In this document: positions 124 through 55,080 of the stretch, piece after piece | How positions within the stretch are numbered: the first letter of the stretch is position 1 | How the letters are laid out: each line of letters opens with the position of its first letter | Origin: Octopus bimaculoides | Lineage: Eukaryota | Direction of reading: 5' to 3' | NCBI RefSeq assembly: GCF_001194135.2 | Contig: NC_068988.1 | Span: 82,492,982 to 82,550,638 of the forward strand | Length of the DNA: 57,657 nucleotides | The notes under the pieces: model-generated | Database searches by the model: none | What the model was told of the DNA's origin: nothing | The model's input: the letters and a program-made list of their open reading frames with translations, nothing else | Position numbers and translations under genes: made by a program

Positions 124-378
124 TGTGCAGGTGGCACATAAAAGACACCATTTCGAGCGTGGCCATTGCCAGTACCGCCTGACTGGCCTTCATGCGGGTG
201 ACACGTAAAAGCACCCACTACACTCTCTGAGTGGTTGGCGTTAGGAAGGGCATCCAGCTGTAGAAACTCTGCCAAATTAGATTGGAGCCTGGTGTTGCCA
301 TCCAGTTTCACCAGTCCTCAGTCAAATCGTCCAACCCATGCTAGCATGGAAAGCGGACGTTAAACGATGATGATGATA
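124..378 (+). mobile_element. RTE-tail SINE or RTE 3' UTR fragment
   Basis: gagtggttggcgttaggaagggcatccagctgtagaaac...catgctagcatggaaagcggacgttaaacgatgatgatg, ending in a (GAT)n tail. The same tail recurs throughout the window. Confidence 0.75.
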
Positions 379-1788: not shown

Positions 1789-4289
1789 GTAACTGGTGTA
1801 GGCTACAGCTGTGATCTCTCTTTACTTCCTGGGTCTTCTCAATCACAGCAGATCTCCAGAGGTCTCGGTCTTTCGTCATTGCCTCTGTGAGCTCCAACAT
1901 CCAAAGGTCATGCTTCACCACCTCATTCCATGTCTTCCTGGGTCTCCCTTTACCATGGGTTCCTTCCACTGTTAGGGAGTGACACTTCTTCACACAGCTC
2001 TCCTCATCCAAACACAAAACATGACCATACCAGCACAGTTGTCTCTCTTGCACACCACATCTGATTCTTCTTATGCCCAATATTTCTCTGAGAGCGCTTA
2101 CACTCTGTTGTGTGTGCACACTGACATTACACATCCAGCGGATCATACTAGCTTCATTTCTTTCAAGCCTATGCATGTCTTCAGCAGTCATGGTCCATGT
2201 TTCACTGCAGTGTAGCGTGGCAGTTCACACATCTGCATCATACAATCTACCTTTCAGTCTGAGCGAGAAACCCTTTGTCACCAGTAGAGGTAGGAGCTTT
2301 CTGAACTTTGCCCAGGCTATTCTTATTCAAGTGGCAATGCTCTCCAAGCCTCCACCTCCATTACAGACTTGGTCACCTAGGTAGCGGAAGCTATAAACTA
2401 TTTCTAGTTTCTCCCCATGGCATGTGATGGAATCAGTTTTCTGAGCATCTGTGGTGTTTATTGCCCTTGTGCATCTACCACACACAAAAGTTATCTTTCC
2501 AGTTAACCTTCCTTTGATGTTGTTGCACCAATTATGTGTCCATAGCTTACACTGGGTATATCTTATGGAATTTCTACCTACACCTTTTCTACAGATCAAG
2601 CAGGGCCATCTACCTGAAGGGATTTGTGATGTGTTCACTTTCCTACTTACTAGGACTTTGGTTTTTGCAACATTTGACTCTAAGGCCCTTCAATTATAAA
2701 CCTTGCTTCCACACCTGAAATTTCTTCTCTAGTTCTGGAAGGGATTCTGCTATGAGAGCAAGGTCATCAGCATAGAGGAGCTCTAAGGGGCATCCTGTCT
2801 TGAATTTCTCTGTTATTGCCTGCAGGACTATGCTGAATAAAAGGGGGCTGAGTGCTGATCCTTGGTGAACCCCTACTTCTGCCCAGAATTCTTCACTCTA
2901 CTCATTGCCGACCCTTGCCTTACTAACAGCATCCCTGTACAGATCTTGCTAACCGCTCGTCTATCCCCAGTTTCCTCATCACCCACCAGATAAGCAATCG
3001 GGGGACCCTGTAAAAGGCTTTCTCCAAGTCAACAAAAGCCAAGTATAGGAGTTTATCTTTGACTAAGTATTTCTCCTGCAGTTGACATACCAGGAATATA
3101 GCATCAGTGGTGCTTCTACCTGACACAAAATCAAACTGCATCTTATCTAAGCAGACTCTCTCCCTAATTAGTTGGGCTATGACCCTCTCTGTGACCTTCA
3201 TCACCTGATCCAGCAGTTTGATACACCTGTAGTTATTTCTATCTAAAGCATCACTTTTATCTTTGTAGCAGTCGACCCTGGTGCTGCTACACCAGTCATT
3301 GAGTATGACTCCTTCGTGAACTACCTGGTTTACAATACGGTTGACTAGACCATAACCCACACCACCAGATATTTTAAGCATCTCAGTAGTGTTTCTTGAT
3401 GGGCTGGGGGCTTTTCTTGACTTCATATCCTTAATTGCTTTATCTATCAGGGTGCTATCAATTCAGGTAGCTGGTCCCTCTACTGAATCAACATTTGGCA
3501 GGCTCTCCTCCTCCCATTCATTCTCCACATTCAGCAACTGTTCATAATGGCTTCTTCAAGCCTCTTTCTTTGCAGAATCAGTAAAAGCAAGTGCACCATC
3601 ATCCATGTGGACACATTTCTCTTCTGTAACATCACAATTTTCTCTCCCACACTGTCTTGCAATCCAAAATACTTCAGTTCTCTGGTCCTCATGTTGCTGA
3701 ACATTGGCAAACTTCTTCTTCTTTTTCTGCTTCTCCCTTGGTTAAGTAGACCTGTCTCCCAGCCTCCCTTCTGGCTATCTGGTACAGTTCCCTGCTATCC
3801 TCACCCTTCCAGGCTTTCCAGGCCTGTTTCTTTGCTCTAATAGCCTTGTCTACTGCATTATTCCACCACTCTAGGTCTGGAAGAGACTTTGCACCAGCCA
3901 CAGATTTGGTCTGTGGTGCTCAGTAAGCTGTCCTATAGGAATTTCCAGTTACCCTCTATGTCCAAAGTCTGTAGCTCCTCCTCCCACTTATCAAATTTCT
4001 CAATGAAGATGTCCCTAAATCTCTGACCATGTAAAGGGTTCTTTAGCTTCCAAATCCTTCTTTTCTAGATTGGTCTGCTTCTTGGCATCCTTCTTGCTTC
4101 AAGTCTAAAGTCACTAATGACTAGTCTATGCTGGGGGGTACATTCTTCACCAGGGAGGGTCTTTGTATTTAAGAGCAACCTTGCATCCCGCTGCCTGGTG
4201 AGGATGAAATCAATCTGGCTAGCAGAGTCACCTGATTGATAGGTTATCTGGTGGCTGTCTGGCTTCCTGAAGTTAGTGTTGCAGATTAA
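1789..4289 (-). mobile_element. RTE-clade LINE, RT and C-terminal part (disrupted)
   Basis: ORF pieces 1727-2191, 2327-2638, 2923-3426 and 3689-3901 give RT motifs (YRCIKLLDQVMKV, QFDFVSGRSTTDAIF, LAFVDLEKAFYRVPR) and the RTE C-terminus (WYGHV...GRPRKTWNEVV). Confidence 0.93.
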
Positions 4290-9799: not shown

Positions 9800-10425
9800 T
9801 GCATGTGTGTTTGTTTCCATTAGATATACAAGAGGCAGCAAAAGCAGAGATAATGTCAGACAAGAAAATGAACAGAAACTGCTATTGAATAACAGAGAAA
9901 GCAAGGAAGGAAAGAAGGAAGGAGAAGGAGGTGGGATGACTTTGAAGTGAATGACATAAAAATGGAAAGAGAGAACGAGAGAAGGAGAATCATGTATCAA
10001 ATTTTAATGGTTTCTTCATCCTGTATGTCTTTTGCAATAATTTCTATTTTAATACCATTTACTAAAATAGAGATTTTTTTCTTTTTCCACCGAGACACAT
10101 ATTAGTTGTTGTTGTAGTTGTTGTTTAACTCCGAGTCAGCTCTGATCAACCCCATCTGTTTAAGCATATCTCTTTTTTTTTTTTATCTTTTTACTTGTTT
10201 CAGTCATTAGACTGTGGCCATGCTGGAAGAATTTTAGTCGAACAAACTGACCCCAGGATTATTTTGTAAAGCCTGGTACTTATTCTATCATTCTCTTTTG
10301 CCAAACCACTAAGTGATGGCAATGTAAACACAATGGCACCAGTTGTCAAGTAGTGATGAGAGACAAACACATATACAAAGGCATACATACGCACACATGT
10401 ATATATATATATATATATATATATA

Positions 10426-11504: not shown

Positions 11505-11700
11505 ATGTGTCATCATCATCATCATCATCACCATTTAATGTCTGTTTTCCAAACTGGCATGAGTTGGATGGCTTGACAGGAACTTGGTTTCTATGGCTAG
11601 ATGCCTTTCCTAATGCCAACCACTCCACAGAATGTACTGGGTGCTTTTTACATGGCACCATCATGAGCGCTTTTTATATGGCACCAGCACCAGTGCTTTT
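11505..11700 (-). mobile_element. RTE-tail SINE fragment
   Basis: (CAT)n followed by the reverse complement of the shared tail (tggcatgagttggatgg...ggctagatgcctttcctaatgccaacc). Confidence 0.7.
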
Positions 11701-12834: not shown

Positions 12835-14479
12835 CAATTAAACGAATCTGAATTTCTGTAGATCAACACTTAGAAAAAAAAATGGACAGAGAAGAAATTG
12901 CAGAGGTATACATTCTTTGGAGGAAAAGGATTGTCTTTATTGCAAAGTGGTATGGAGCTGACTAATTCAGATATGCAGACATCATTGTAAAAAAGTAGAA
13001 AAGGTAATAAAAATATATGAAAAGAAAGAGAAACCAACCAGTTTATTTATAGGATGATGATTGTCATATGTTGGTGAGTAAGTCTTCACCAATAAGGGTG
13101 CGGAACCACAATGCAGTCTGAAAGCAGAACTCCTACACAGGTAGCATTTGAGCTTTGTAAAGGTCAATAACTAAACAGAGTTGAAATATTAGTATACTTC
13201 CCTAATCCCTACTTCTCTAATACTCATTTCTAGCCCTTCTGTCACCATTGTTTTCCAAATTTATATTTACTGTGCACAAGACTCTGCTCAACACATACAA
13301 ACACCAACTTTCACACTGTAAAATGACTGGTTAAATAAGCAGACAAAGTTTAAGGTTATAAACTCCCTCTAATTTTGACTACCTAGAGTTAGTGCTGTGA
13401 GAAAATGCACCGAATACACTCAGTAAAGCAAGTTGGTGAGAAGAAAAAGCACCTAGCCAAATAACACATACAAGCATCAAGTCTTTGGGAGATGTAGCTC
13501 CTGATAGGAGATGACACAGACAGTAATGATTCATCTGAGCAATGCCAGCACAGAAAGCAGATGTAAAATGATGATGATGACAAAAAAAAAAACAACTCCA
13601 AATGTATTTTATTGTATTCATAGAGATTAATTCATGATAAACCAATTCAGTTTCAATTTATGGCAAGATATATTTCACTTTCTCAACTTCAATGGAACAA
13701 GGTAAATATCACACTTCATTTCCTCACCTCTCTGGTAAGTCTGCGATACCCTCTCTCTCTCTCTTTCGGAGAGAGGCACAAGCACATACACAGACATATA
13801 CACACACGGCAGTAACTTCCGCCTACCAAATTCAATCACAAAGCTTCGGACAGCCCAGGGTTATAGCAGAAGACACATGCCCAAGGTGCCACACGGTGGG
13901 ACTGAACCCAAAACCATGTAGCTGGGAAGCAAGCTTCCTAACCACACAACTAAAGTGCATATACATATGCGCAGCGCTATTCGTGTAGCAAGTTTTCTAC
14001 AGCCGGATGCCCTTCCTGCTGCCAACCCCCACTTGTTGCCAAGCGAGGTAGTTTTTTCCCTCTCTCGCTCTTTCAGGTAATGTTTACATGAACCAATTAA
14101 TGATTTTAATGAGATAGTTCCTGTATTTCATATAAATCCCTGGAAATGGTTTACAGTTATATGATGGCCAATCTTAATTTACATTTGTTAAACATAATAA
14201 ATTAATATAGAATACCATCAACAGACTTGGTATTTTACCATTTATTGCCCTCACCAACATTATTATAATTAATAATGCAGCATGCTCGCAAAATTATTAC
14301 CACATAAGACAAAATGTGGCATTTCTTCTGATTCATTATGTTTTGAGTTCAAATTCCACTGATGATGATTTCAGGGTTGATTGAGTCCTGGGGTTGATGT
14401 TATCAAATTTCCATTTTCCCCTCAAAATTGTTGGCCTTGTGCCTTAATTATAAAGAATTATGATTGTTATTATTTTTAA

Positions 14480-14552
14480 GCCTCCATAGCCGAGAGGTGA
14501 GAGCACTGGTCTTGTAAAGCAAGGATTGCGAGTTCAATTCTCACTGTGGGCT
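14480..14552 (+). pseudogene. tRNA-Thr(TGT) pseudogene
   Basis: GCCTCCATAGCCGAGAGGTGAGAGCACTGGTCTTGTAAAGCAAGGATTGCGAGTTCAATTCTCACTGTGGGCT is 73 nt with a Thr-type CTTGTAA anticodon loop (TGT at 14513-14515) and a TTCAA T-loop. About six stem mismatches: one acceptor, two D, two anticodon, one T stem. Confidence 0.75.
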
Positions 14553-15970: not shown

Positions 15971-18474
15971 TATAAATAATGGGCTTAGTATAGTCTTTGT
16001 CTGCCCAATTCTTTCATAAGGTATTGGTTGGCCTGCTGTATAGCAAGGGCTGAATATGAAACCTTGTGGCTGAGAAGCAAACTTCTTATCCATGCAGCTG
16101 TGCCTATATCTATTCTACATGAAACAATGTTTGTGCACGTGTGTGTGTGTATTTTATTTGTTTCAGCCATTAGACTGCAATCATCGCTAAACACGTTTTT
16201 CACAAAACACTGGAAATGAACAACTTTGCTTGTATGACAATGATGCCCATTTACAAAGGTCTCTCAACATCTAGCATACAGACACCTCCTTTATCACTGT
16301 ATTCCCACCGAGTTAAAGGGGCTTTATCTTGGGAGTTACTTGGTGACTTCACCGGTGCCAATGCCACCTAAAAAGCACCCAGTACACTCTGTAAGGTGAC
16401 TGGTATTAGAAAGGGCATCCAGCCATAGAAACCATACCAAAGTAAACACTGGAACTTGACACAATCCTCCAGCTCATTGGATTCTGTCAGAGCATGCAAT
16501 GCATGCCAGCATCAAAAGCATGCTGAGCAAAATGCTTAGTAGTATTTCATCCTGCTTTACGTTCTGAGTTCAAATTTCACCAAGGTTAAAACTTTGCCAT
16601 TCATCTTTTTGGGCTCAATAAAATAAGTACCATTTAAGCACTGGGATCAATATAATCGACTTATCCCTCCCTTTAAATTGCTGGGCTTGTGCCAAAATTT
16701 GAAACTGATATTTTATNNNNNNNNNNNNNNNNNNNNNNNNNNNNNNNNNNNNNNNNNNNNNNNNNNNNNNNNNNNNNNNNNNNNNNNNNNNNNNNNNNNN
16801 NNNNNNNNNNNNNNNNNNNNNNNNNNNNNNNNNNNNNNNNNNNNNNNNNNNNNNNNNNNNNNNNNNNNNNNNNNNNNNNNNNNNNNNNNNNNNNNNNNNN
16901 NNNNNNNNNNNNNNNNNNNNNNNNNNNNNNNNNNNNNNNNNNNNNNNNTCCGATCTATATATATGTTTCTGCTCACTTGAGCAGCAAGCTAAATGCTACA
17001 TCATAATATTGATTAATAGCTAAGTGTTCTGAATGATTCAAAGTTAAGTGTCTTTACTAGAGACACTTCATACAAAAGATGATTGTAAACAAAGTATCAG
17101 TCAACTTGACCAGCTGCAATAGGTATTTCATTAGCAGAAGATGGACATGTTTTCAAAGCAAACAGCTGAGAACAGAAAGTAACTACAATTTTCAAATAAA
17201 ACATATTGCATTAAATCATGAATGCATTAAATCATGAATGAAGTGCTAAAGTTTACAAAGAAAGTGAGCATATGAAGTTGCTTCAATCAACCTTCATTAT
17301 TCACAGGTATTTATTTGATGAGATTCAGGCACAAATTAGCCTGAAAAAAAAAATAGCCAGATGCTACCATCTAAATCAAATACAATATGTTACTAAACAA
17401 AACTTGTAAAATTCAGGAATGAGGACAGAAATAAACATTCTGATTTTTTTTCTAGAACAGCTTCATAAAGATAGACTGTTTAGCTGAGAAATTAAATACA
17501 ATTTACACCATACAATAACCAACATATCCTGTTGGCTTGCTCTTGAAATTGCATCAATATAGTATAGCTGAGTGCACTCTGTTTTTTTAAATACATATAT
17601 AGGGTTTCATTTACTTAATATAGTGAGTTGAAAAATTTCAATTAACTGAGATTATCCAAACAATTATAGGTAAAAGCTCCCACTAGAGGCATGTAAAAAT
17701 CTAAAATGCAGCAGGCAAGGGAGACAGCACCAATAAAATAGATCACTGAAATATTGGAAAATATAGAAAATACAACACAAAAAGTGGATCTGGTCACAAA
17801 TTATGATCCATTGTCCAGTCAATAACAACAGTTCTACGCACACATTCTTTACACTTCTTTTTCACTTGCATTTTCAATGAAGAGGAAGTCTAACTGGAAA
17901 GTATTGAGGTGTGGTGTAAACCTTAATAGAGAATACAATAAGATTTTTAATGAAAGGCTACAATAAAATATAATGCTGGACTTTAAATTCAGACTTACGT
18001 TTACCAAGCAAATAAATGGGCTTAGTCAACTAGTAGTTATTATATAAACTTCTCCCATTCAACTAACCTACGCACTTAGTTAATGCTAATAATGTACAAT
18101 GACAAATTTGATTTAAAGAGAATGTCAGGCAAAACTGAAAGGAAATTCTTTAGAAAAATAGCAGAAAATAAGAAGGTTTAAACTCTTCACTTTGATCAAA
18201 TAATGTAAATACAACAACTGCTGCAACAACAAAATAATTAGAGTGAGTAGAGAGTGAAATTATTCAAAACTATATTAGCGCAATGTGGACAAGCTGTTGT
18301 TAATAAAAAAAACACCTGTATATCAAATAATTAAAACCTGCATCCATAATAATCAGCAGGCCATGTTTGATACTTTCTACAGCATTTCTCATCATCATAA
18401 TCTTTTGTTATTCTTTAATTAAATATCTATAAGAAGAATTATAATTCCAAATATAAAGTGTTGTTTCCAACATA

Positions 18475-23256: not shown

Positions 23257-23451
23257 TTAAGAAGTGGTCGCAGCAGGGGGTTGTGGTCGAGGTTGACTTA
23301 GTTTTGATAATGTATCTGGACTTGCAGAAGTTCGCAAAATACTGTTTTCATACTCTAATTGGTTATTTTTCTCTGTCAATTCCTTGATTTGTTCTTTCAG
23401 AACTTCTACCTCTTCTCTTACAGCAAACATCAAATGACTTTTCACCAAGTC
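23257..23451 (-). CDS. TSC22D: TSC22-domain family (bunched-like) gene, terminal coding exon: [64 protein letters not shown]
   Basis: Translation matches the TSC box/leucine zipper of TSC22D1-4 and Drosophila Bunched, with heptad leucines [22 protein letters not shown]. Acceptor ctctttattttaacag precedes 23451 (AG at 23453-23452), phase 0. TAA stop at 23257-23259. Confidence 0.97.
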
Positions 23452-26849: not shown

Positions 26850-27405
26850 ATACAGAGAAAATGGAAAAAGCACTAGGTGTATTGAAAGAAAAGTTAAGCA
26901 TAAGAGGAATTATATATGCAGTGTGCAAGAGAGGAGGCTGCACTGGTTTGGTCACATGAGCTGGAAAGATGAGGACAGATGCATAAACAAGTGCTGATCT
27001 CTTTAAGTGGATGGAGTTTGTGGAAGAGGAAAACCCAAGAAGACATGGGACAAAGTACTGAAGGTTGATTCTTACAAAGCAGATGACAGAGGACTGAGAT
27101 ATGTGGTGCATTGCTGTACTCAAGAAAAGTTGTTCACCACAACAGAATTGATATCCTAAAACCAAGGTTCCACATAAAACATATTGGTGTTGGTGTCACA
27201 TAAAAAGTACTGGTGATGGTGCCACGTAAAAATTACCCAGTACACTCTGTAAAGAGGTTGGCATTAGGAAAGTCATCCAGCTGTAGAAACCAAACCAAAA
27301 CCGATTATGGAACCTGGTGCAGCTCCTGACCATGCCACTTTTTGTCAAGCTGTCCAACCCATGCCAGCATGGAAAACAGACATTAAATGAATGATGGTGA
27401 TGATA
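26850..27405 (+). mobile_element. 5'-truncated RTE LINE (C-terminal coding remnant plus 3' UTR tail)
   Basis: QERRLHWFGH...GRGKPKKTWDKV followed by the ggcattaggaaagtcatccagctgtag...catgccagcatggaaaacagacattaaatga tail. Confidence 0.8.
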
Positions 27406-28434: not shown

Positions 28435-28684
28435 GCAACAGTCAAACAACAAATCCATTTCCAATATAACCAAACATGTCTAGCAATACAACTTTCCTTT
28501 ATCCTAATATGTATGAATGTTTCCAGTTCTAAAACTGTCAATTGAGCATTAGTCATCAGCTCATGTTGAGAGACGCAGTACTAGACACCTCAAATATATA
28601 AACAGTTCAAAAGGTATATAATCAATATTTTGAAGATAATTTTCCAACATTAATTGCAAAGAGTTATTTAAAAAGATCACTTAC

Positions 28685-28730
28685 CATTGCTTGTTCTATT
28701 TTATTATCAATGGCTACTGTACTTGAACCA
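28685..28730 (-). CDS. TSC22D: TSC22-domain gene, 46-nt internal exon encoding (x)GSSTVAIDNKIEQAM
   Basis: Minus strand reads tttattttgttttgcag|T GGT TCA AGT ACA GTA GCC ATT GAT AAT AAA ATA GAA CAA GCA ATG|gtaagt. It encodes the conserved VAIDNKIEQAM and joins in frame to the 23451 exon across a 5233-nt GT-AG intron. Not in the ORF track. Confidence 0.96.
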
Positions 28731-28816
28731 CTGCAAAACAAAATAAATATATATAAATATTATTGCTAAAACTTTTCACAAAAATAATGATATATAACAA
28801 TATAATTAGTAGTGAC

Positions 28817-35284: not shown

Positions 35285-36050
35285 GGGGCCAAAACTAACA
35301 GCTTTTAGGACTGCCATCCGATATCAATGGTCTGCCCTATCAAATGCCTTGTACTGACCCAAACTGACCCGTACCCCACCAAAGTCAGATCTATTCCCAA
35401 CTGTCTTACTGTGTAATGCATGAGGTAGAGGTCACTGCAGATAGATCTGCCAGGAATCAGACAGGTTTGTCTGTCTTTGACTATACTACTAACAACAAGC
35501 ACTAGCCTCTTGGTGAGCACTTTAGCTAAAATTTTGAACTGGGTGTTGAGCAGAGTTATGGGTCTGAAATTTTCAATCACAGTCCCCTAGTTCAGATCTT
35601 ACCCCAGCACAATCACCGCTCCCTGCCTCACATGACTGGGAATTCCCCCAGTCTGTTGCTAACTACACTAGATAGCAGCCTGAACAGGAGTGAACAAGTA
35701 AAACATGTAGAAATATAAATCAAAGGGCAGACCATCCAATCTTGGTGAGTTATGCCTGAAACAGTGACTCAGCACATCTTCCACTTCCTCTGCTGAAATC
35801 AGCTACTGACAATATTCAATCTCCTTGTACGATAGGCATGGCACATCATTGCTGCCTCAAGTATAACACCCCATCAAAAACAGTCCTGCAAAGTGCTTCT
35901 AAAACATTGCACTCATCTGCTTGGAATTGGAGGGCACATGGTCACTGCAGTCCACCACAGACCAAATTCTAACTCTGCTGCTGTGATGTGCCTCTACCAC
36001 CCAGGCCCAACAAACATGCTAGAGCATGCAGTCCAACTCAGCTCTGGGCA
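35285..36050 (-). mobile_element. L1/Tx1-like LINE reverse transcriptase fragment
   Basis: ISAEEVEDVL...SPRLDGLP...IENFRPITLLNTQFKILAKVLTKRL...QTCLIPGRSI, typical early RT domains of L1/Tx1. Decayed. Confidence 0.85.
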
Positions 36051-36357
36051 TATATCCCTAGGTTGTCACACATACTTTTTAACAAATTAACCATGTAGCC
36101 AACAGTAGCATAGTAAGAGTTTTGTTTGACTGCTGGGGATGGGTTTCAAAATTATAGTTAGGTAGGTAGATTCACAGACAAGGACATAGAGATTAATAGG
36201 AAGACAGAAAGACACAGACAGGATGTGTATGTGTGTGTGTACGTATAGACATACACACATATGTATATATAGTAAAAAGATGAAGGAAGGATGATGATGT
36301 AACTTTAACACAAGTTACTAGAATATATTTTGAGAATTTCTAACAACCATATAGATA

Positions 36358-36748
36358 GGTGTAGGCATGGCTGTATTTTAACAAGCTTGCTTCCCAACCA
36401 CATGGTTCAGGTTCAGTCCCACTGTATGCCACCTTAGGCAGGTGTCTTCTATTATAGCCTTGGCTCAACTAAATCCTTGTAAGTAGATTGGTAGATGGAA
36501 ACTAAAAGAAGCCTGTCATGTGTGTGTGCGTGTCTTTGTATCTTTGTTTATTTCCCACCACTGCTTGACAACCAGCATTGGTGTTTTTATGTCCCTGCAA
36601 CTTAGTGATTCAGCAAAAATGACCAATAGAATAAGTACCAAGGGTAAAAAAATAAGCACTAAGGTAGATTCATCTGACTAAAAATTTTTCAAGGTGGTGC
36701 CCCAGCATGGACGCAGTGTAATAACTGACACAAGTAAAACATGAAAGC
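36358..36748 (+). mobile_element. Near full-length tRNA-derived SINE (family A)
   Basis: tRNA-like head ggtgtaggcatggctgt...ggttcagtccc, central caccttaggcaggtgtcttct, internal (TG)n, tail ccagcatgg...acaagtaaaa. Further copies or fragments near 10186-10400(-), 13790-13960(-), 15486-15540(+), 20680-20800(-), 38060-38220(-), 40320-40470(-) and 42900-43010(-). Confidence 0.75.
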
Positions 36749-38059: not shown

Positions 38060-40485
38060 CACACACACACATATATGAGGGGCTACCACATTGTTTTCAG
38101 CAACTAGATTCACTCATATACCATTGGTCAGCCTAGAGCTATAATAGGTAACATGGTAGGATTGAACCCAAAATGCGGTTGTGAAAGGAGTGTCTTATCC
38201 TTGCAGCCATGCTTGTACCTGTAGAGATTAATTATGTGACAAATGGTATTTAATGTCAGGAATAATAGGCAAGATGCAAAGTTCCTTAGTCGTTACAAAG
38301 ATGAAAAAAACCAGCTGACTGAAATGATCTCAGAATACTATTGGTATTTATTGATGATAAAGGAGTGGAATGCATGTATGGGTGGATTTGAACTCAGAAC
38401 ACAGTGACAAAAATATTTTATCTAGTGTGATGCTATTTCTGTTGGTTTGTTGCAGAAATAGAACTGACCCTAAGAATTTCAGAGACGTTAGAAATAAATT
38501 TAGATTTCTTAATAATGTCTTTTGGAGAAATATCTTTTTATTGAATCAATACAAACTTTGGTTAATCAATAAATATTGAGCATGTTTTGTTTTGTTTTTC
38601 TGTTAACACATGACAACTGTTTTTAATAGATTTTTACATCAATATATTACATATAAAATAAAAACAACTCACCACATACTGATAATTCCACATGAGAAAT
38701 ACAAAGAGATTTTCAAATGCAAATAGTATACATAGAAAATTACATGAATAGTCCAAGAGAAAGTGATCAGTGCAAAAGAACAAAACTAATGGCAACCTTG
38801 GACGAGAGGTAGCACCAAGAACAAAAGACTAATGTGTCTAGTAGTTAACTAGTCTGAACCAAAACAAAACAGAAAAGACACTACAAGTTCCGCTAAACAC
38901 ACTTGGAACACATATTCTCCTACCCAAGGGAACTTAGACACAACACTCTAGCAAACAAAACACACCAGTATGTTGCAGAGAAATATTAATAAATGGTTTT
39001 ATAAGCACTGAAAACAGCTAACAGAATGATTTTAGGCTTTTAAATTAGATCTTAAATCTGAAAAACTACATTTTTAATTGCAACAAAATTAAATGTAAGA
39101 GAAATTCAGAAATTACAGGTTGTGTGATTTGTATAGTATTTTTGGCAAACAACCAGTCAAGTTAGTACTTCACATTAAATTAGAAGTCATGAGCTGAGTA
39201 TTTAGTAATTAGCAAACAGGATTAGAGGTTACACATACACATTATCTTAGAAAGAATATTTGCAGACACTTTTTACACTTCTAATATAAATAATTGAATA
39301 TCAAAATTTTTTTTTTTAATTTTGAAAGGATGAATTATCTTTGTTTTCGGGGGGAGGGGGGTAAGGAAAGAATTTAGCAGTTTAAAATTTTATAATACAA
39401 TTAGCTAAGAGAGTTGTACTTTAATACCAATAAAGATTAGCTGTAACATCAAGAATTTGTTGAGAATATTTTTAAAAGGTGTGCCTTTTAAGAGGAGAAA
39501 CAAGTTTAATGAGATACTAGTCAGAACACTTACACAAACTGCAAAGGAAGTAACATATTGTCTAGTGCAGTTATAGATCATTAAAAATCAAGATATATTT
39601 GCATTTAGAAGGAAAATTATATCACCATGTTACAATCACCTTCAAATCAGGTCATTAACACTCTAAGACTTGAATTTCTACATTAACATGACATTTCAGA
39701 TTTACAGGAAGGAGATGCAGGAAGGGATAAGAATTCAGTTTTCATACTTTTCCTATGTTATATAAAATTGTTACAATCAAAAAAATACAAATTGTTTATT
39801 TTTTATGAAGGTAAGAGCATTTTTTTGTTTTCCAACTAAATGACTGAACGGAAACAGAGAAGCATACTTTATATAATCTCTCAACACCCAGCATAAAGTT
39901 ATTTCCTTCACTACTGCACGACCACTCAGTTGAGAGGTATTATTTAGTGACCTCACTAGTGACAGTGTCTCGAAAAAGACACCCAGTATATTATGTAAAG
40001 TGGTTGGCATATGGAAGGACATACAGCTCCAAAAACCATGCCAAAGCAGACACTGGAGCTCAAAAAGTCCTCTGGCTTGACAAAAAACTTGTGAAACTAT
40101 CCAACCTAAGTCAGAATGGAAGACAAGCATTAAACAATGATGATGATGGCATGTGTGTGTGTGCGCATGTGTGTAAACAATAATATTGGTTGTGTTTTGT
40201 TATTTTTTTAAAAGAGAATCACTGGCTCTCTGCATTTCCAGTGATGACACTTGATGCAGTTCAGGTAGATGTATTTTTTCAAACCAGTTCCATCCATTTT
40301 CTTATAAATGTCCACACACATTATAGATTTTTACAGTCCCTGCCTACTAAATTCCACTCTCAAATTATGGATCAATCCAAGTTTAAGTCAAAGACACGTC
40401 TCAAAGGTGCCATGCAGTAGGATCAAGCCCAGAACTATTTAGTTGTGAAGGAGACTTAACTACATAGCAATCCATACTTATAGCC

Positions 40486-40516
<31 letters not shown>

Positions 40517-40610
40517 TGTTTAATGTCCGCTTTCCATGCTAACATGGGTAGGACGATTGGACTGAGGACTGGCAAGTCAGAAGGCTGCACCAGGCTCCAA
40601 TCTGATCATG
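40486..40610 (-). mobile_element. RTE-tail SINE fragment
   Basis: (CAT)n then ttgtttaatgtccgctttccatgctaacatgggtaggacg, the reverse complement of the tail at 330-378. Confidence 0.7.
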
Positions 40611-45120: not shown

Positions 45121-46447
45121 TTAATAACTAACTGCAGATTTTAATTTAAACTGAAATGATATTGTAATGTCCAATACTCTCCCCAAACTTTTTTTCCTTT
45201 TAATTTTCAAATCAAAGCAAATTTTCTAGCATAGTTAAATTAATATTTCCTATACTTCATAATTTTTTTAAAATATAATTAAAAGATTTTTTTTTGCTTT
45301 TTATCAAGAATAAACCAAGCCACTACAAAAACCAAAACAAAAAAAAAAGCATTAAAATAACTCATCAATTAACAATAAAAAAAATTACTAAATAACCTTC
45401 AACACTGTTTTAAACTGAGAAATAATTAACTAAATATAGCTCAAGTAACATTGAAAATGACAAATACCTGAGTATATTCCCAACAAATAGTTTAAACAAC
45501 TTCATTCATTATGACAAATACCTGAATTAATATATTCCCAAGTTTAATATAAACAAGAATTAGCCAAGAATTTTGAATGTAGTTCCACATACAAATAATA
45601 ATAATAATAATAATAGCAATAATAATCCTTTCTACGACAGGCACAGGGCCTAAAAATGTGGTGGAAGATGTTAATCAATTACACTGACTCCAGGGCTTAT
45701 CTGGTACTTATTTTATTGACTCTAAAAGGAGGAAAGGTAAAATAAACCTCAACGTAATTTGAACTCAAGAGCCAGAAGAAATGCCACTAAGCATTTTGTC
45801 CAACTAACTAACGATTCTGCCAGCTTGCCATCTTAATAATTCCTTCAAATTTTGGCACAAGGCCAGCAATTTTTAGAGGAGGAGGGGGTAAGTCAATTAC
45901 ATCGATCCCAGTGCTCAACTACTACTTATTTTATTGACCTCAGAAGGATGAAAGGCAAAACCAACCAATAGAACTATGTAAACTGAACGACAAATACTGT
46001 GTAAACTAAAACCTTATAAACCTAAACTTTGAAGAACTTTAACAAATATATTCATTCTATGAATAGAGAGTAAAATGACAACAAAGTTGAAAGACTTGAT
46101 TAAATTACATTAGAAACTGATTTTGACTTCTTTTCATTTTGTATACACATATGCAGGCAGATGCACAAACGCACTCACACACACAATATATGTTATGTAA
46201 AACTTGTAAAACATACAGAAGTGTAAGTTATACAGAATGTACACATTGTTCAATACACAAATCTATACTCTGAATAGAGTGGAAAGATATGTTTATTATA
46301 GCAAAAGGTGACAATTTACTCCAGTTTCACTGGTTAGTCAACTGGCTGCTAAAACAGGAATAAACTGTCATGTTAACATCATTGTTTCATGTCTGCCTTC
46401 TATGCTGGCATGTGTATCCAAAAATTAAGGAATGGAGTAGAAAAAAA

Positions 46448-46539
46448 CCCAGGCTACGTATGTTTCATAGTGAGCAGAACCTCAGAAGTAGTAATTATCC
46501 AAGCGAGGTGTATGCCGCAGGCTACTCTTCAGGCCAAGG
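46448..46539 (-). ncRNA. Minimal type I hammerhead ribozyme, same strand as the TSC22 gene
   Basis: Minus strand: ccttggc-CTGAAGA(46532-46526)-gtag...ctat-GAAA(46466-46463)-C-atac-G-TA(cleavage between 46455 and 46454)-gcctggg. Stem I 6 of 7 bp. Stem II gtag/ctat, then gcgg/ctgc and acctcg/tgaggt. Confidence 0.8.
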
Positions 46540-46944
46540 ATATCTTGATTATATGAAGTTTACATAGCTATTAGGAGACCTATGTTAACACATCAGCAAA
46601 GGAAACCGATAGAATAAGTACTAAACAAAACAAAAGTACTGGAGTTGATTTGCTCAACCCTTCAAAGCTACAGTTCAATGAATTTCTTACCACACATGTG
46701 TGTGAGAGAGTGCACACACATACACACACCTGTTTCATAATGAAAGTGCAGTATGCCTGAAAATATTCACATAACATAAAAATGCCTCACTCCACCATTT
46801 TTTTTTTTTCGCAAATTTATTATCCATTGTGTTTCTATAGTTATTGTTTACCAAGTCAACAGTTCAGGGATAAAGAAACAGTGGAGAGAGATTATGAAGA
46901 TTCAGTAAGCAAAATGGTTGAATGAAAGAATGAACAAACACATT

Positions 46945-47107
46945 CTTTTCTACTATAGGCACAAGGCCTGAAAATCTTGGGGAGGGGGCCAGTCGATTAG
47001 ATCAACCCCAGTATGTAACTGGTACTTAATTTATCGACCCCAAAAGAATGAAAGGCACAGTTGATGAAAGGCACAGTTGATGAAAGGCACAGTTGATGAA
47101 AGGCACA
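46945..47107 (+). mobile_element. SINE family C fragment (aggcacaaggcctgaaa...gtacttaatttatcgacc...tgaaaggc)
   Basis: The same core recurs near 11880-12070, 14330-14450, 14570-14760(-), 16520-16710(-), 29360-29570 and 45620-45960. Confidence 0.65.
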
Positions 47108-51242: not shown

Positions 51243-51629
51243 TGTAAGAAGCTTGCTTCCCAACCACATTATTCACAGCTCACTCCCACAGTGAAGCAAC
51301 TTGGGAAAGCTATCTTCTACAATAGCACTGGGCCAACCAAAGGTCTGTGAGCGGATTTGGTAGCCCAAAACTGAAAGAAACCAGTGTGTGTGCGTGCGTG
51401 CGTGTGTGTAAGAATTTATTTGTATATGTCTTTGTGTTTGTCTTCCACTGTTGCTTGACAGTAGGTTTTGTTTGTTTACATCTCTAACTTAGTGGTTCAG
51501 AAAACAGGTGAATAGAATAAGAATCAGGCTTTAAAATAAGCACTGGAATAAGTTCACTCAACTAAAATTTTTAAGATGCTGCCCCAGCATGGCGACAGAA
51601 CAATCACTGAAACAAGCAAAAGGTAAAAG
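51243..51629 (+). mobile_element. Near full-length tRNA-derived SINE (family A)
   Basis: Colinear with 36358-36748 from head to tail. Confidence 0.7.
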
Positions 51630-52383: not shown

Positions 52384-53303
52384 TCTACTACATATGTGGA
52401 AATCTGTGGGTGTGTTTGTTTGTGGCATTGTTATCTAACTCCTACATCATTGTATCGATTTTGATGAAACTTAACACGTGAGTAGAACTCATGTATGGAA
52501 AACTAGTGACATACTTAGATTGTTGAAAAAATTGATAATAGGGCACCTAGAAGGGATTCTTATACATACTACGTATAACTAATATATTATTTTTAAACAT
52601 CCAAGGGGAATAACCCATTTGCTCCTGAAAGGATCCTTATATATATATAGCCATGGGAAATAACCCATTCATGTTCGTAAATTTATTTCATATAAATCAA
52701 ATTGAGCATGCTTATTTCTTAGTATTTGAACTATTTGAGTTATTCTTGCAAGTTATCCAGTACAGTGCTTAAATAAGTAAATAGTATTTTCCTAATCAAT
52801 ACATCCACTTCTTTCAGTTAGTGACTTATGCACGAATATACCAACACTACCGCCACTGAGGGTAATATTCTCTGCAAACGCACAAAAGCTTTTTTCTAAG
52901 TTTTTTTACTTTGAATTGTTATTATCACATATCTGATTAGCCTGTTATTACATAACATGCTTCACGATTTTAGTATACATACCTTATTAGTATTTCCTCC
53001 TAAGTTCTATATACTTTGGAAAGGTATTAAAGCCCTTTTCAGGGCTACTTTATTTCAATTCTTACTATCGTGTAATTAATTTATGTTATTTCATACCTGC
53101 CTTCACAATTTGGTTATTCATAACTTATTGGAAATTCCTAAAAACAAGATCCTGAGTAAGACAGTTCAGTAATCTCAGTAAATGCAAAGAAACCATTTCA
53201 AGGGCTACATACTTTGTATTGTTACTGGATTAGCAAAACAATTATTAAAACGGAAGCAAGAGATAAGCCCTGCTTTCCTGGGAATTACAGGTTACGTCAG
53301 CTA

Positions 53304-53304
<1 letters not shown>
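52384..53304 (+). mobile_element. Non-autonomous Helitron (921 bp)
   Basis: A|TC 5' end (52383-52385), gtttgtttg microsatellite and cgattttgatgaaact core, hairpin CCTG-ggaatta-CAGG (53277-53291), CTAG|T 3' end (53301-53305). No TSD. Confidence 0.75.
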
Positions 53305-53329
<25 letters not shown>

Positions 53330-53338
<9 letters not shown>

Positions 53339-53900
53339 TATTGATACCGTTAACGTTTTGTCTCTTTATATATATTTTTATTTCTCATGTTTATGTTTAT
53401 TCCTTGAATGATTTTAGGTATTTTTTTTAGGAATTTGACCTGAAGAGTGACTGATTTTGGGAGTAAAATCATTTCCCCATTCTAATGAACTTGAATAGAA
53501 TTTGCTTATGATTTTATATAGTCCTATTTCAGCCATGAAACGCACGTAGTCATGTACTAGCACTGACTTTTATACATTATATTATTGTATTAATTTTTAC
53601 TGTCCTATTTATAATTTATTTGATTTTTAAATTAATATTCTAATGATGAATGTTTCTTTATATGATATATATTATTAAATTATTAAAATTTTAGATTAAA
53701 ATCGTAGATAAATATTGATATGGTATATGTCTCACAGTATGATTGTGGAAGGGTTCTTAGTTGAGTGAGTTGTAGAGTGGTGGTTCGTCTCTAAATTAGT
53801 TATATATATATATTTATATATTAGGAAACTCGGTGTAATATTATACCAATTTTTGCCTGTAAGGTTGGAATAAGTTTTTATTCCCTAATATTATTACTAT
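53330..53900 (+). mobile_element. AT-rich hammerhead-bearing repeat (Penelope pLTR or retrozyme-like, non-coding)
   Basis: Contains the 53433-53555 hammerhead. Its distal part (minus strand aatattagggaataa...ttacaggcaaaaa, 53850-53890) resembles 15690-15730. Boundaries approximate. Confidence 0.5.
53433..53555 (+). ncRNA. Minimal type I hammerhead ribozyme with a long stem II (Penelope/retrozyme-like)
   Basis: atttgac-CTGAAGA(53440-53446)-gtgactga...tcagccat-GAAA(53537-53540)-C-gcac-G-TA(cleavage after 53548)-gtcatgt. Stem I tgac/gtca. Stem II 7 of 8 bp, continuing with tggga/tccta, gtaaaatcat/atgattttat (10 bp) and attcta/tagaat (6 bp). Confidence 0.85.
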
Positions 53901-53910
53901 TATACATATT

Positions 53911-53952
<42 letters not shown>

Positions 53953-54397
53953 NNNNNNNNNNNNNNNNNNNNNNNNNNNNNNNNNNNNNNNNNNNNNNNN
54001 NNNNNNNNNNNNNNNNNNNNNNNNNNNNNNNNNNNNNNNNNNNNNNNNNNNNNNNNNNNNNNNNNNNNNNNNNNNNNNNNNNNNNNNNNNNNNNNNNNNN
54101 NNNNNNNNNNNNNNNNNNNNNNNNNNNNNNNNNNNNNNNNNNNNNNNNNNNNNNNNNNNNNNNNNNNNNNNNNNNNNNNNNNNNNNNNNNNNNNNNNNNN
54201 NNNNNNNNNNNNNNNNNNNNNNNNNNNNNNNNNNNNNNNNNNNNNNNNNNNNNNNNNNNNNNNNNNNNNNNNNNNNNNNNNNNNNNNNNNNNNNNNNNNN
54301 NNNNNNNNNNNNNNNNNNNNNNNNNNNNNNNNNNNNNNNNNNNNNNNNNNNNNNNNNNNNNNNNNNNNNNNNNNNNNNNNNNNNNNNNNNTATATAT

Positions 54398-54550
54398 GAG
54401 TGGTTGGCATTAGGAAGGGCATCCAGCTGTAGAAACTCTGCCAAATTTAGATTGGAGCCTGGTGTTGCCATCCGGTTTCACCAGTTCTCAGTCAAATCGT
54501 CCAACCCATGCTAGCATGGAAAGCGGACGTTAAACGATGATGATGATGAT
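54398..54550 (+). mobile_element. RTE-tail SINE, near-identical to 227-378
   Basis: Only a handful of differences from 227-378 over about 150 bp. (GAT)n tail. Confidence 0.75.
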
Positions 54551-54584
54551 ATATACACACACACATACACACACATATATATAT

Positions 54585-55080
54585 GTTAAGCATGAAGGAG
54601 GATCGGTGATGATCTTGAGGGCTATATCTTGGAAATCTGTCTGTCCAATGGTTTCCCTTCATGGCAGAATTAAAAGTCAAGGCTATTTAAGCATTTTATC
54701 TGAACAAATTCATCCTATGATTGCGGAACTGTTTCCAGGAGGAAATGCAATCTTTCAAGAATGATTAAAAAAGACTCTTTATCTATGGCTCCTTGTTACA
54801 TGGCTAAAAATGACCCAAGATTTGTTGGATAAGAACGGCATTTAAAAGCTTCCATGGCCAAGCCAGTCACCAGATATGAACCCTATTGAACACCCCTTGT
54901 GCATAATGGACAGGACACTTCATAAAAAGAACAATAAAGCATCTTCAAAACCAGATCTTTGAGATTATTGCATGAAACTTGGCAAGAAATTCCTCAAGAG
55001 AATATTCGTTATCTGATCATTAATATGCCTAATAGGGTCCTTGCATTGAAAAATGCAAGGGGCAGGTTTACTAAATATTA
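54585..55080 (+). mobile_element. Composite Tc1-like fragment (two different transposase families)
   Basis: 54585-54760 matches the 645-1788 family (VKHEGGSVMIL...PMIAELFPGGNAIFQE). 54783-55080 encodes a different C-terminus (LPWPSQSPDMNPIEH...ETWQEIPQENIRYLIINMPNRVLALKNARGRFTKY*). Confidence 0.8.

What the first reader, a model, noticed from the sequence alone, without database searches (positions are those of the whole stretch)
46448..46539. Hammerhead ribozyme on the sense strand of the presumed large TSC22 intron
Seen: complete core (CUGAAGA / GAAAC-atac-GUA), 6/7-bp stem I and a three-segment 59-nt stem II. Its stems differ entirely from the 53.4-kb motif while the core is the same, so it is an independent family or a structurally conserved one. 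The loop context CATACG is one CpG-type transition from the palindrome CGTACG. Inference: the gene's upstream exons must lie beyond 28730 on this strand. If they lie beyond 46.5 kb, the motif is transcribed inside the pre-mRNA, where cleavage could affect long-isoform splicing or create new RNA ends.
Basis: partly seen in the sequence, partly recalled or inferred. Interest (0 to 1): 0.85.

Follow-up and report, generated by a model that had tools for sequence, protein, structure and literature searches.

The report
Decayed hammerhead ribozyme relic, octopus intron
A 92-base stretch in the long first intron of an octopus TSC22 gene carries every conserved hammerhead-ribozyme nucleotide and belongs to a small family of such motifs in octopus DNA, but this copy looks like an old, neutrally drifting mobile-element fossil, not a working RNA-cutting switch.

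Summary
On the minus strand, 46539-46448 reads CCUUGGC|CUGAAGA|59-nt helix II|GAAA|C-AUAC-G|UA^|GCCUGGG. That is a complete type I hammerhead core, with cleavage predicted between 46455 and 46454.

It is not chance. A general descriptor finds two perfect hits in the window (this one and 53433-53555, + strand) against 0.028 expected. The two also share about 10 positions the descriptor does not require. A third, much better formed copy lies in the orthologous Octopus vulgaris locus that I fetched.

The intron inference is supported. The window is colinear with O. vulgaris TSC22, whose annotated intron 1 is about 70 kb. The motif's ortholog sits inside it on the sense strand.

A working ribozyme is not supported:
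- Helix II folds no better than shuffled sequence.
- The catalytic fold is 6.3 kcal/mol above the minimum-energy fold.
- Helix III is one base pair plus a non-palindromic loop, and there is no partner copy on the same strand.
- Between species the motif changed at 7.6% against 5.8-5.9% in the flanks, with two uncompensated stem I breaks.

Rfam detects none of the copies, so its silence says little. The best reading is an old solo relic of a retroelement-type hammerhead family.

The parts
46533..46539 (-). Stem I, 5' strand (CCUUGGC)
   Evidence: pairs 6/7 with 46448-46454. In O. vulgaris it reads CCUUAGU, giving 4/7.
46526..46532 (-). Core box C3-A9 (CUGAAGA)
   Evidence: Identical in O. vulgaris.
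46467..46525 (-). Helix II region, 59 nt. It closes with G10.1.U11.1, U-A, A-U, G-C. The interior is poorly paired.
   Evidence: -10.1 to -10.6 kcal/mol, z about 0 against shuffles. Four transitions relative to O. vulgaris.
46463..46466 (-). Core G12 A13 A14 A15.1 (GAAA)
46456..46462 (-). Minimal helix III: C15.2, tetraloop AUAC, G16.2, U16.1
   Evidence: Self-duplex of ACAUACGU is -2.1 kcal/mol against -9.8 for the palindrome ACGUACGU.
46455..46455 (-). A17. The predicted scissile bond is between 46455 and 46454.
   Evidence: Read directly from the sequence. Cleavage itself was not tested.
46448..46454 (-). Stem I, 3' strand (GCCUGGG), followed by a U7 run
53433..53555 (+). Second family member, antisense to TSC22. 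It has the same core, a 90-nt helix II that folds end to end, and helix III C-GCAC-G.
   Evidence: helix II -20.0 kcal/mol, z = -2.8. No ortholog in O. vulgaris.
46565..46680 (-). Flanking fragment of an abundant tRNA-derived SINE ('SINE-B'), 5' of the motif
   Evidence: 68-nt BLAST match at 78-82% to about 30 fragments in the window and L007. The homology stops before the motif.
46377..46415 (+). Flanking fragment of a second SINE-like repeat ('SINE-A' head), about 30 nt 3' of the motif
   Evidence: The motif region itself is not similar to SINE-A bodies (score 26 against null 24.8 +/- 3.2, P = 0.34).
28684..28731 (-). TSC22 exon 2 (GSSTVAIDNKIEQAM), preceded by a 3' splice acceptor
23257..23451 (-). 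TSC22 last coding exon ([25 protein letters not shown]...TTS*)
   Evidence: 100% amino-acid identity to O. vulgaris CAI9726736.1.

Best explanation
The motif is a solo, old copy of an octopus family of type I hammerhead motifs of the kind carried by Penelope-like elements and animal retrozymes.

Shown:
- The core is complete.
- It shares family signatures with at least two other copies, in the window and in O. vulgaris.
- It was already present before the window species and O. vulgaris diverged.
- It lies in sense orientation about 17.7 kb upstream of exon 2, inside the roughly 70-kb first intron of TSC22. It is therefore part of the pre-mRNA of the isoform annotated in O. vulgaris.

Inferred:
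- In the parent element such motifs cut multimeric transcripts. Two neighbouring copies pair their short palindromic helix III regions into one extended helix.
- This copy has lost that ability. It has no partner, its helix III loop is no longer palindromic, helix II is not a stable hairpin, and a competing fold sequesters the GAAGAG box.
- It has since drifted at the neutral rate, so it most likely does nothing to TSC22 RNA, or cleaves at a negligible rate.
For: Core and stems.

Non-random occurrence.

Family membership:
- m46 and m53 share N7=A, G10.1.U11.1, U10.2-A11.2, C15.2-G16.2, a 4-nt loop ending in AC, A17 and G1.1-C2.1, plus a 14-nt local match (P = 0.003).
- A third copy at L007 47047-47121 has stem I 7/7, an 8+8-bp helix II, the palindrome ACCUAGGU, and again G10.1.U11.1. 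It folds at -26.4 kcal/mol, z = -3.9.
- A degenerate fourth copy resembling m53 lies about 130 nt upstream of that one.

Age and position: the O. vulgaris ortholog is at L007 62456-62547 within gene range 10001-86993.

Decay and neutrality:
- Fold z-scores of 0.06 and -0.26.
- Constrained fold -14.4 against minimum -20.7 kcal/mol.
- Dimer helix -2.1 against -9.8 kcal/mol.
- 7.6% substitutions against 5.8-5.9% in the flanks, at the 75th percentile of 92-nt windows.
- Two stem I pairs broken and no double changes.
- The O. vulgaris copy folds worse than shuffles, z = +1.4.

Architecture matches published descriptions. Metazoan type I hammerheads have a single-pair helix III capped by a palindromic tetraloop, act as dimers, and occur mostly as dispersed solo copies with very variable sequence (PMC4209133; PMC7229834).
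Against: - No Penelope-like reverse transcriptase or GIY-YIG coding remnant lies near any copy, and there is no tandem array. The retroelement origin is inferred from architecture only.
- Helix II (42-90 nt) is far longer than the 4-8 bp described for these families.
- The 10.1-11.1 pair is G.U, not the G-C that PMC4209133 calls highly conserved.
- Rfam hammerhead models do not match, even at E <= 10. They also miss the well-formed O. vulgaris copy.
- All 19 core and helix III nucleotides are unchanged between the species. That is what selection would give, but P is about 0.25 under neutrality.
- Only two species and three to four copies were available.
- No cleavage data exist.
Confidence: 0.62

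Rival explanations
1. The family's conserved boxes look like a hammerhead but the family was never catalytic. The boxes would be conserved ends or binding sites of a lineage-specific repeat, and the long 'helix II' and the G.U closing pair would reflect that.
For: All three intact copies have U at 11.1, and helix II is 42-90 nt, outside described ranges. Rfam models do not score any copy. No retroelement coding context was found.
Against: The conserved positions are exactly the hammerhead core, while helix sequences differ yet still pair. The O. vulgaris copy has perfect stems and a palindromic helix III, as dimer-type hammerheads require. Helix II of m53 and Ov47 is significantly stable, z = -2.8 and -5.7.
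Confidence: 0.18
2. It is a working intronic ribozyme. It cleaves nascent TSC22 pre-mRNA from the distal promoter, perhaps conditionally, and so tunes isoform output.
For: Sense orientation inside the annotated 70-kb intron. Core fully intact in two species. The three paired helix II substitutions all preserve pairing. There is a precedent for conserved intronic hammerheads in amniotes, cited in PMC7229834.
Against: - No thermodynamic support for the fold.
- Stem I drops to 4/7 in O. vulgaris with no compensation.
- Substitution rate is not below the flanks.
- Helix III is too short for a monomer, and neither a dimer partner nor a palindrome is present.
- The sister copy m53 is antisense and lineage-specific, as expected for random insertions.
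Confidence: 0.07
3. It is a pure chance match to a permissive hammerhead pattern in AT-rich repetitive DNA.
For: The core has few specified bases. With stem I of at least 5/7 and no helix II requirement, about 0.9 hits per window are expected. One such weak hit exists at 28474-28566. This copy's helix II is not stable.
Against: Two perfect hits against 0.028 expected, with 0 of 400 simulations reaching 2. About 10 further positions are shared with m53. A third independent copy exists in O. vulgaris. The joint pattern is nearly absent from a metagenome collection of 241 million records.
Confidence: 0.07

Closest known systems
Minimal type I hammerheads of Penelope-like elements (Cervera & de la Pena 2014, PMC4209133)
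   Same: Type I topology and a complete core. Helix III is reduced to 1-2 bp with a palindromic or near-palindromic loop, implying action as dimers. Helix II is longer than in canonical hammerheads. Copies are mostly dispersed and solo, with very variable stems. Monomer activity is expected to be low.
   Different: Helix II here is 42-90 nt, not 6-8 bp. The 10.1-11.1 pair is G.U, not G-C. There is no extra unpaired nucleotide between A9 and 10.1. No pLTR or RT-EN open reading frame was found nearby.
Type I hammerheads of amphibian satellites and animal non-LTR retrozymes (Cervera & de la Pena 2020, PMC7229834; bioRxiv 10.64898/2026.07.22.740005)
   Same: A single-pair helix III capped by a tetraloop, as described for HHR_Amex1. 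Helix II begins G10.1, U10.2-A11.2, as in the widely used CUGAUGAGUCC...GGACGAAAC hammerhead (string confirmed in papers). Dimer-dependent cleavage.
   Different: Those motifs sit in tandem repeats of 170-400 bp and have a 4-bp helix II with loop-loop contacts. The octopus copies are solo or loosely paired, no tandem array was seen, and no loop 1/loop 2 contact can be identified.
Conserved intronic hammerheads of amniotes, HH9 and HH10 (Rfam RF02275, RF02277)
   Same: A type I hammerhead on the sense strand of a long intron of a protein-coding gene.
   Different: Those are defined by deep sequence conservation and are detected by Rfam models. This motif gives no Rfam hit and shows no constraint between two Octopus species.
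'HHR_half_core' of Naiad Penelope-like elements (Craig et al. 2021, PMC8557442)
   Same: Hammerhead core halves separated by unusually long spacers (35-50 nt). These elements insert into microsatellites and survive as remnants in cephalopods.
   Different: Those cases do not fit stem descriptors. The octopus motifs have stems I, II and III. No Naiad coding sequence was found here.

Membership tests
Hammerhead ribozyme (any type) | Conserved core: C3 U4 G5 A6 N7 G8 A9, G12 A13 A14, A15.1-U16.1, H17 | tested here: met
   CUGAAGA / GAAA / A-U / A17 at 46532-46455, minus strand. Identical in O. vulgaris.
Hammerhead ribozyme (any type) | Three helices radiating from the core | tested here: inconclusive
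   Stem I 6/7 and helix III (A-U, C-G, tetraloop) are present. Helix II closes with 4 bp, but the 59-nt hairpin is no better than shuffles and the full fold lies 6.3 kcal/mol above the minimum. This feature is met clearly by m53 and Ov47.
Hammerhead ribozyme (any type) | G10.1-C11.1 closing pair of helix II | tested here: not met
   G10.1.U11.1 in m46, m53 and Ov47. This is either a family trait or CpG decay of C11.1-G12; CpG observed/expected is 0.21.
Hammerhead ribozyme (any type) | Site-specific self-cleavage after H17 | not testable with these tools
   No transcript-end or biochemical data are accessible.
Rfam hammerhead families (RF00163, RF00008, RF02275, RF02276, RF02277) | Covariance-model score at or above the gathering threshold | tested here: not met
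   No hit at gathering score or at E <= 10. The models also miss the well-formed Ov47, so this failure has low weight.
Penelope-like-element minimal hammerhead | Located in the pseudo-LTR flanking an RT / GIY-YIG open reading frame | tested here: not met
   No PLE-type RT or GIY-YIG motifs in the window or L007. The only RTs are LINE-type, at about 2774, 35308-35586 and L007 50931-54108. The literature notes that most genomic copies are solo.
Penelope-like-element minimal hammerhead / amphibian-type type I hammerhead | Helix III of 1-2 bp with a palindromic loop that allows a dimeric active form | tested here: inconclusive
   The architecture is present. The palindrome is intact in Ov47 (ACCUAGGU). 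In m46 (ACAUACGU) and m53 (ACGCACGU) it is one substitution away; duplex energies are -2.1 and -3.1 kcal/mol against -9.8 and -13.3.
Animal non-LTR retrozyme | Head-to-tail tandem repeats of 170-400 bp, each with a type I hammerhead | tested here: not met
   No tandem repeat covers either motif. Only in O. vulgaris do two dissimilar motifs lie about 130 nt apart.
Conserved intronic hammerhead (HH9/HH10-like) | Purifying selection on core and stems across species | tested here: not met
   Two-species comparison: 7.6% substitutions against 5.8-5.9% in the flanks, stem I falling from 6/7 to 4/7, no compensatory change. Power is low with two species.

The most novel reading that the evidence does not exclude
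Octopus genomes carry an undescribed hammerhead lineage with a long helix II and a G.U closing pair, invisible to Rfam, that was still mobile after Octopus species diverged. On this reading, sense-strand intronic copies such as this one (or Ov47 in O. vulgaris) retain conditional self-cleavage, for example through pairing in trans with other copies. They would then truncate distal-promoter TSC22 pre-mRNA and create new RNA ends.
Probability: 0.06. Interest if true: 0.8.

Novelty: new member of a known kind. Interest (0 to 1): 0.4.

Why it matters
Dispersed type I hammerhead motifs tied to retroelements are known in many animals. I found no report of them in cephalopods in the searchable literature, and Rfam models miss all the copies seen here.

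The three to four copies found in about 150 kb hint at a large octopus family with an unusually long helix II. That would extend the known structural range of natural hammerheads. It would also show that covariance-model scans undercount them.

For TSC22 itself, the evidence says the motif is a passenger. That guards against over-reading 'ribozyme in an intron' as regulation.

Tried and rejected
1. Rfam at gathering score and at E <= 10 on the region, the whole window and L007: no hammerhead hit. I rejected this as evidence of absence because the clearly structured Ov47 is also missed.

2. Looking for the motif inside a repeat: self-BLAST of the window, inverted repeats and context-to-context BLAST of the two motifs. 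Nothing beyond microsatellites.

3. SINE derivation. The motif is flanked by fragments of two SINE families, but the motif region shows no significant similarity to them. Rejected.

4. Orthologous ORFs through the protein database, using a concatenated six-frame query and exact look-ups: no hits.

5. A Tc1 transposase query meant to sample more octopus DNA returned non-octopus contigs with CpG observed/expected of 1.04. Abandoned.

6. Mapping the 5' exon of a related cephalopod transcript (L001) onto the window: no match.

7. CpG-island search for a promoter: none found.

8. Metagenome scan for the family pattern: two chance matches only.

9. An inversion between (TA)n tracts as the explanation for m53 and Ov_up being on opposite strands: no extended inverted homology. 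Rejected.

10. Flanking microsatellites as insertion-target evidence: (TA)n is too frequent in 52-57 kb to carry weight.

11. Exact look-ups of L007 LINE and mariner ORFs, and of further TSC22 clusters, to reach more octopus loci: nothing usable.

Full report
**What is there.** Read on the minus strand, 46539-46448 is CCUUGGC-CUGAAGA-[59 nt]-GAAA-C-AUAC-G-UA-GCCUGGG. This is the order of a type I hammerhead:
- helix I strand;
- C3-A9 box;
- helix II hairpin;
- G12-A14;
- a minimal helix III (A15.1-U16.1, C15.2-G16.2, tetraloop);
- H17 = A at 46455;
- the other helix I strand.

Stem I has 6/7 pairs.

**Is it chance?**
- I wrote a general descriptor: exact core, helix III of at least 1 bp with a loop of at most 8 nt, helix II of 8-110 nt, stem I of at least 6/7, and helix II closure of at least 3/4. 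It finds exactly these two sites. In 400 first-order Markov sequences of the same composition the mean was 0.028 hits, and none had two.
- GAAACNNNCGTA occurs twice against 0.09 expected from dinucleotide shuffles.
- Allowing one core mismatch adds nothing.
- Beyond what the descriptor demands, the two share A7, G10.1.U11.1, U10.2-A11.2, C15.2-G16.2, loop length 4 ending in AC, A17 and G1.1-C2.1. They also share a 14-nt local match (P = 0.003).
- Their helix II interiors and flanks do not align.
- The joint pattern is found only twice in 241 million metagenome records, and both matches lack a stem I.

So the two motifs are related members of one lineage-specific family, not accidents.

**Gene context.** TSC22 is on the minus strand. 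The TSC-box exon GSSTVAIDNKIEQAM is at 28731-28684, behind a splice acceptor. The last exon is at 23451-23257. No further exon, long ORF or CpG island is visible upstream within the window.

A cluster look-up of a related transcript's protein led to O. vulgaris CAI9726736.1, and from there to its locus L007 (OX597821.1:43458828-43555820).
- The window is colinear with L007 in reverse orientation at about 90% identity, with roughly 6% substitutions. Its exon 2 and 3 peptides are identical to the O. vulgaris protein. The window therefore comes from a sister Octopus species.
- In the O. vulgaris gene model, exon 1 is at L007 10001-10114, exon 2 at about 80293-80340 and exon 3 at 86799-86993.
- Intron 1 is thus about 70 kb. 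Exon 1 would lie about 32 kb beyond the window's right end.
- The ortholog of the motif is L007 62456-62547, + strand, which is the sense strand inside intron 1.

Other promoters may exist. A related cephalopod has an 'MCGSS...' isoform whose 5' exon I could not place.

**Is this copy a working ribozyme?** The evidence points the other way.
- The 92-mer folds no better than shuffles (-20.7 kcal/mol, z = 0.06). Its minimum-energy fold pairs GAAGAGUAG with CUACUUC instead of leaving the core free.
- Helix II alone has z = -0.26 (dinucleotide-preserving shuffles) and -0.08 (mononucleotide shuffles).
- Imposing the hammerhead fold gives -14.4 kcal/mol, which is 6.3 kcal/mol worse than the minimum.
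- A helix III of one C-G pair plus A-U needs a second copy to form an extended helix, as described for amphibian and Penelope-like-element hammerheads (PMC4209133, PMC7229834). No second copy lies on this strand.
- ACAUACGU self-pairs at only -2.1 kcal/mol, against -9.8 for ACGUACGU.
- Between the two species the motif has 7 substitutions in 92 nt (7.6%), against 5.8-5.9% in 1-kb flanks. That is the 75th percentile of 92-nt windows.
- In stem I one change gives U.G and two break pairs, taking it from 6/7 to 4/7. The three helix II changes at paired positions are one-sided transitions, and none is compensatory.
- The O. vulgaris copy folds worse than shuffles, z = +1.4.
- The 19 core and helix III nucleotides are unchanged, but at this divergence that happens about one time in four by chance.

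**What the family looks like.** Scanning L007 with the same descriptor gave a third, independent copy, Ov47, at L007 47047-47121, + strand. It reads AUAGCCA-CUGAUGA-GAACUCCG...UGGAGUUU-GAAA-C-CUAG-G-UA-UGGCUGU.
- Stem I is 7/7 and helix II is 42 nt with 8+8 bp.
- Helix III is the perfect palindrome ACCUAGGU, and the closing pair is again G10.1.U11.1.
- It folds at -26.4 kcal/mol (z = -3.9), and helix II has z = -5.7.
- About 130 nt upstream lies a degenerate copy, UUUUAGUAAUUUUA-GAAGAGUAACU...CUGAAACCGCACUUGCGUAGUG. It resembles m53 (P = 0.003).
- m53's helix II is also a real end-to-end hairpin (-20.0 kcal/mol, z = -2.8).

m53 has no ortholog in O. vulgaris, and Ov47 has none in the window. 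The 1.6-kb stretch between conserved anchors (window 52961-54583, L007 45672-47297) is unalignable in either orientation.

So octopus DNA holds a hammerhead family with a long helix II. Some copies are well formed and lineage-specific, while m46 is an older and more eroded copy. Rfam sees none of them.

**Carrier element.** The architecture is that of hammerheads carried by Penelope-like elements and retrozymes. However, I found no PLE reverse transcriptase or GIY-YIG remnant and no tandem array. The motif sits between fragments of two abundant SINE families, but it is not derived from them. The retroelement origin is therefore an inference from similarity to published families, not something shown here.

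**Verdict.** The intron and sense-strand placement is supported by orthology. The claim of a functional ribozyme is not supported. This is a new, somewhat atypical member of a known class. The specific copy is most likely a neutral fossil.

Noticed in passing
L007 47047-47121 (+), O. vulgaris OX597821.1: A well-formed type I hammerhead motif (stem I 7/7, 42-nt helix II with 8+8 bp, palindromic helix III ACCUAGGU) on the sense strand of the same TSC22 intron in O. vulgaris. It is absent from the window and not detected by Rfam.
   Followed up: yes
L007 about 46903-46975 (+): A degenerate hammerhead-like copy (box UAGAAGA with a 3-nt deletion; GAAACCGCACUUGCGUAG) about 130 nt upstream of Ov47. 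Its 5' part resembles m53 (P = 0.003).
   Followed up: partly
window 52961-54583 vs L007 45672-47297: A segment of about 1.6 kb between well-aligned anchors is completely non-homologous between the two Octopus species. It is rich in (TA)n and carries different hammerhead motifs on opposite strands in each species. An inversion was tested and not found.
   Followed up: partly
window 28474-28566 (-); ortholog L007 80459-80580: A weak third core match (CUGAUGA...GAAA...) beside TSC22 exon 2, with stem I only 5/7 and no helix II closure. It is within chance expectation.
   Followed up: partly
window 14480-14552 (+): Rfam tRNA hit just above threshold (34.3 bits) that ARAGORN does not call. It is probably a tRNA-derived SINE head or a pseudogene.
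   Followed up: partly
window 10200-10385, 36356-36728, 46595-46658, 51246-51382 and others; about 20 more in L007: A very abundant tRNA-derived SINE of about 370 nt (...GGGACTGAACCYGGAACCATGTGGTT... in reverse orientation). About 30 fragments occur in 155 kb.
   Followed up: partly
window 279-377, 11518-11568, 13542-13580, 27308-27404, 40091-40148, 40503-40603, 46377-46415, 54449-54550: A second SINE-like repeat whose head is (ATC)n-ATTGTTTAATGTCYGCTTTCCATGCTRGCATGGGTTGGAC. Part of it resembles the reverse complement of the start of the other SINE, suggesting a shared core domain.
   Followed up: no
L007 50931-54108 (+); window about 1831-4286 and 35308-35586 (-): An apparently intact LINE (endonuclease plus RT ORFs of 614 and 443 aa) lies inside the O. 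vulgaris TSC22 intron. The window has only diverged fragments of related LINEs (77% identity).
   Followed up: no
window 54534-55078 (+): A frameshifted C-terminal remnant of a Tc1/mariner transposase (DDE_3). The nearest database relatives are 47-60% identical and come from unidentified eukaryotic contigs.
   Followed up: partly
window 47048-47107: A perfect 16-nt tandem repeat (ATGAAAGGCACAGTTG x 3.8), adjacent to a repeat of about 115 nt that is also present at 45844-45959 and 16590-16704.
   Followed up: no
L004 (Logan SRR11869391), aligned to window 23574-22190: A public-run contig from another related Octopus species, 91% identical across intron, last exon and 3' UTR. Read data from sister species therefore exist and could be used for the conservation test.
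   Followed up: no
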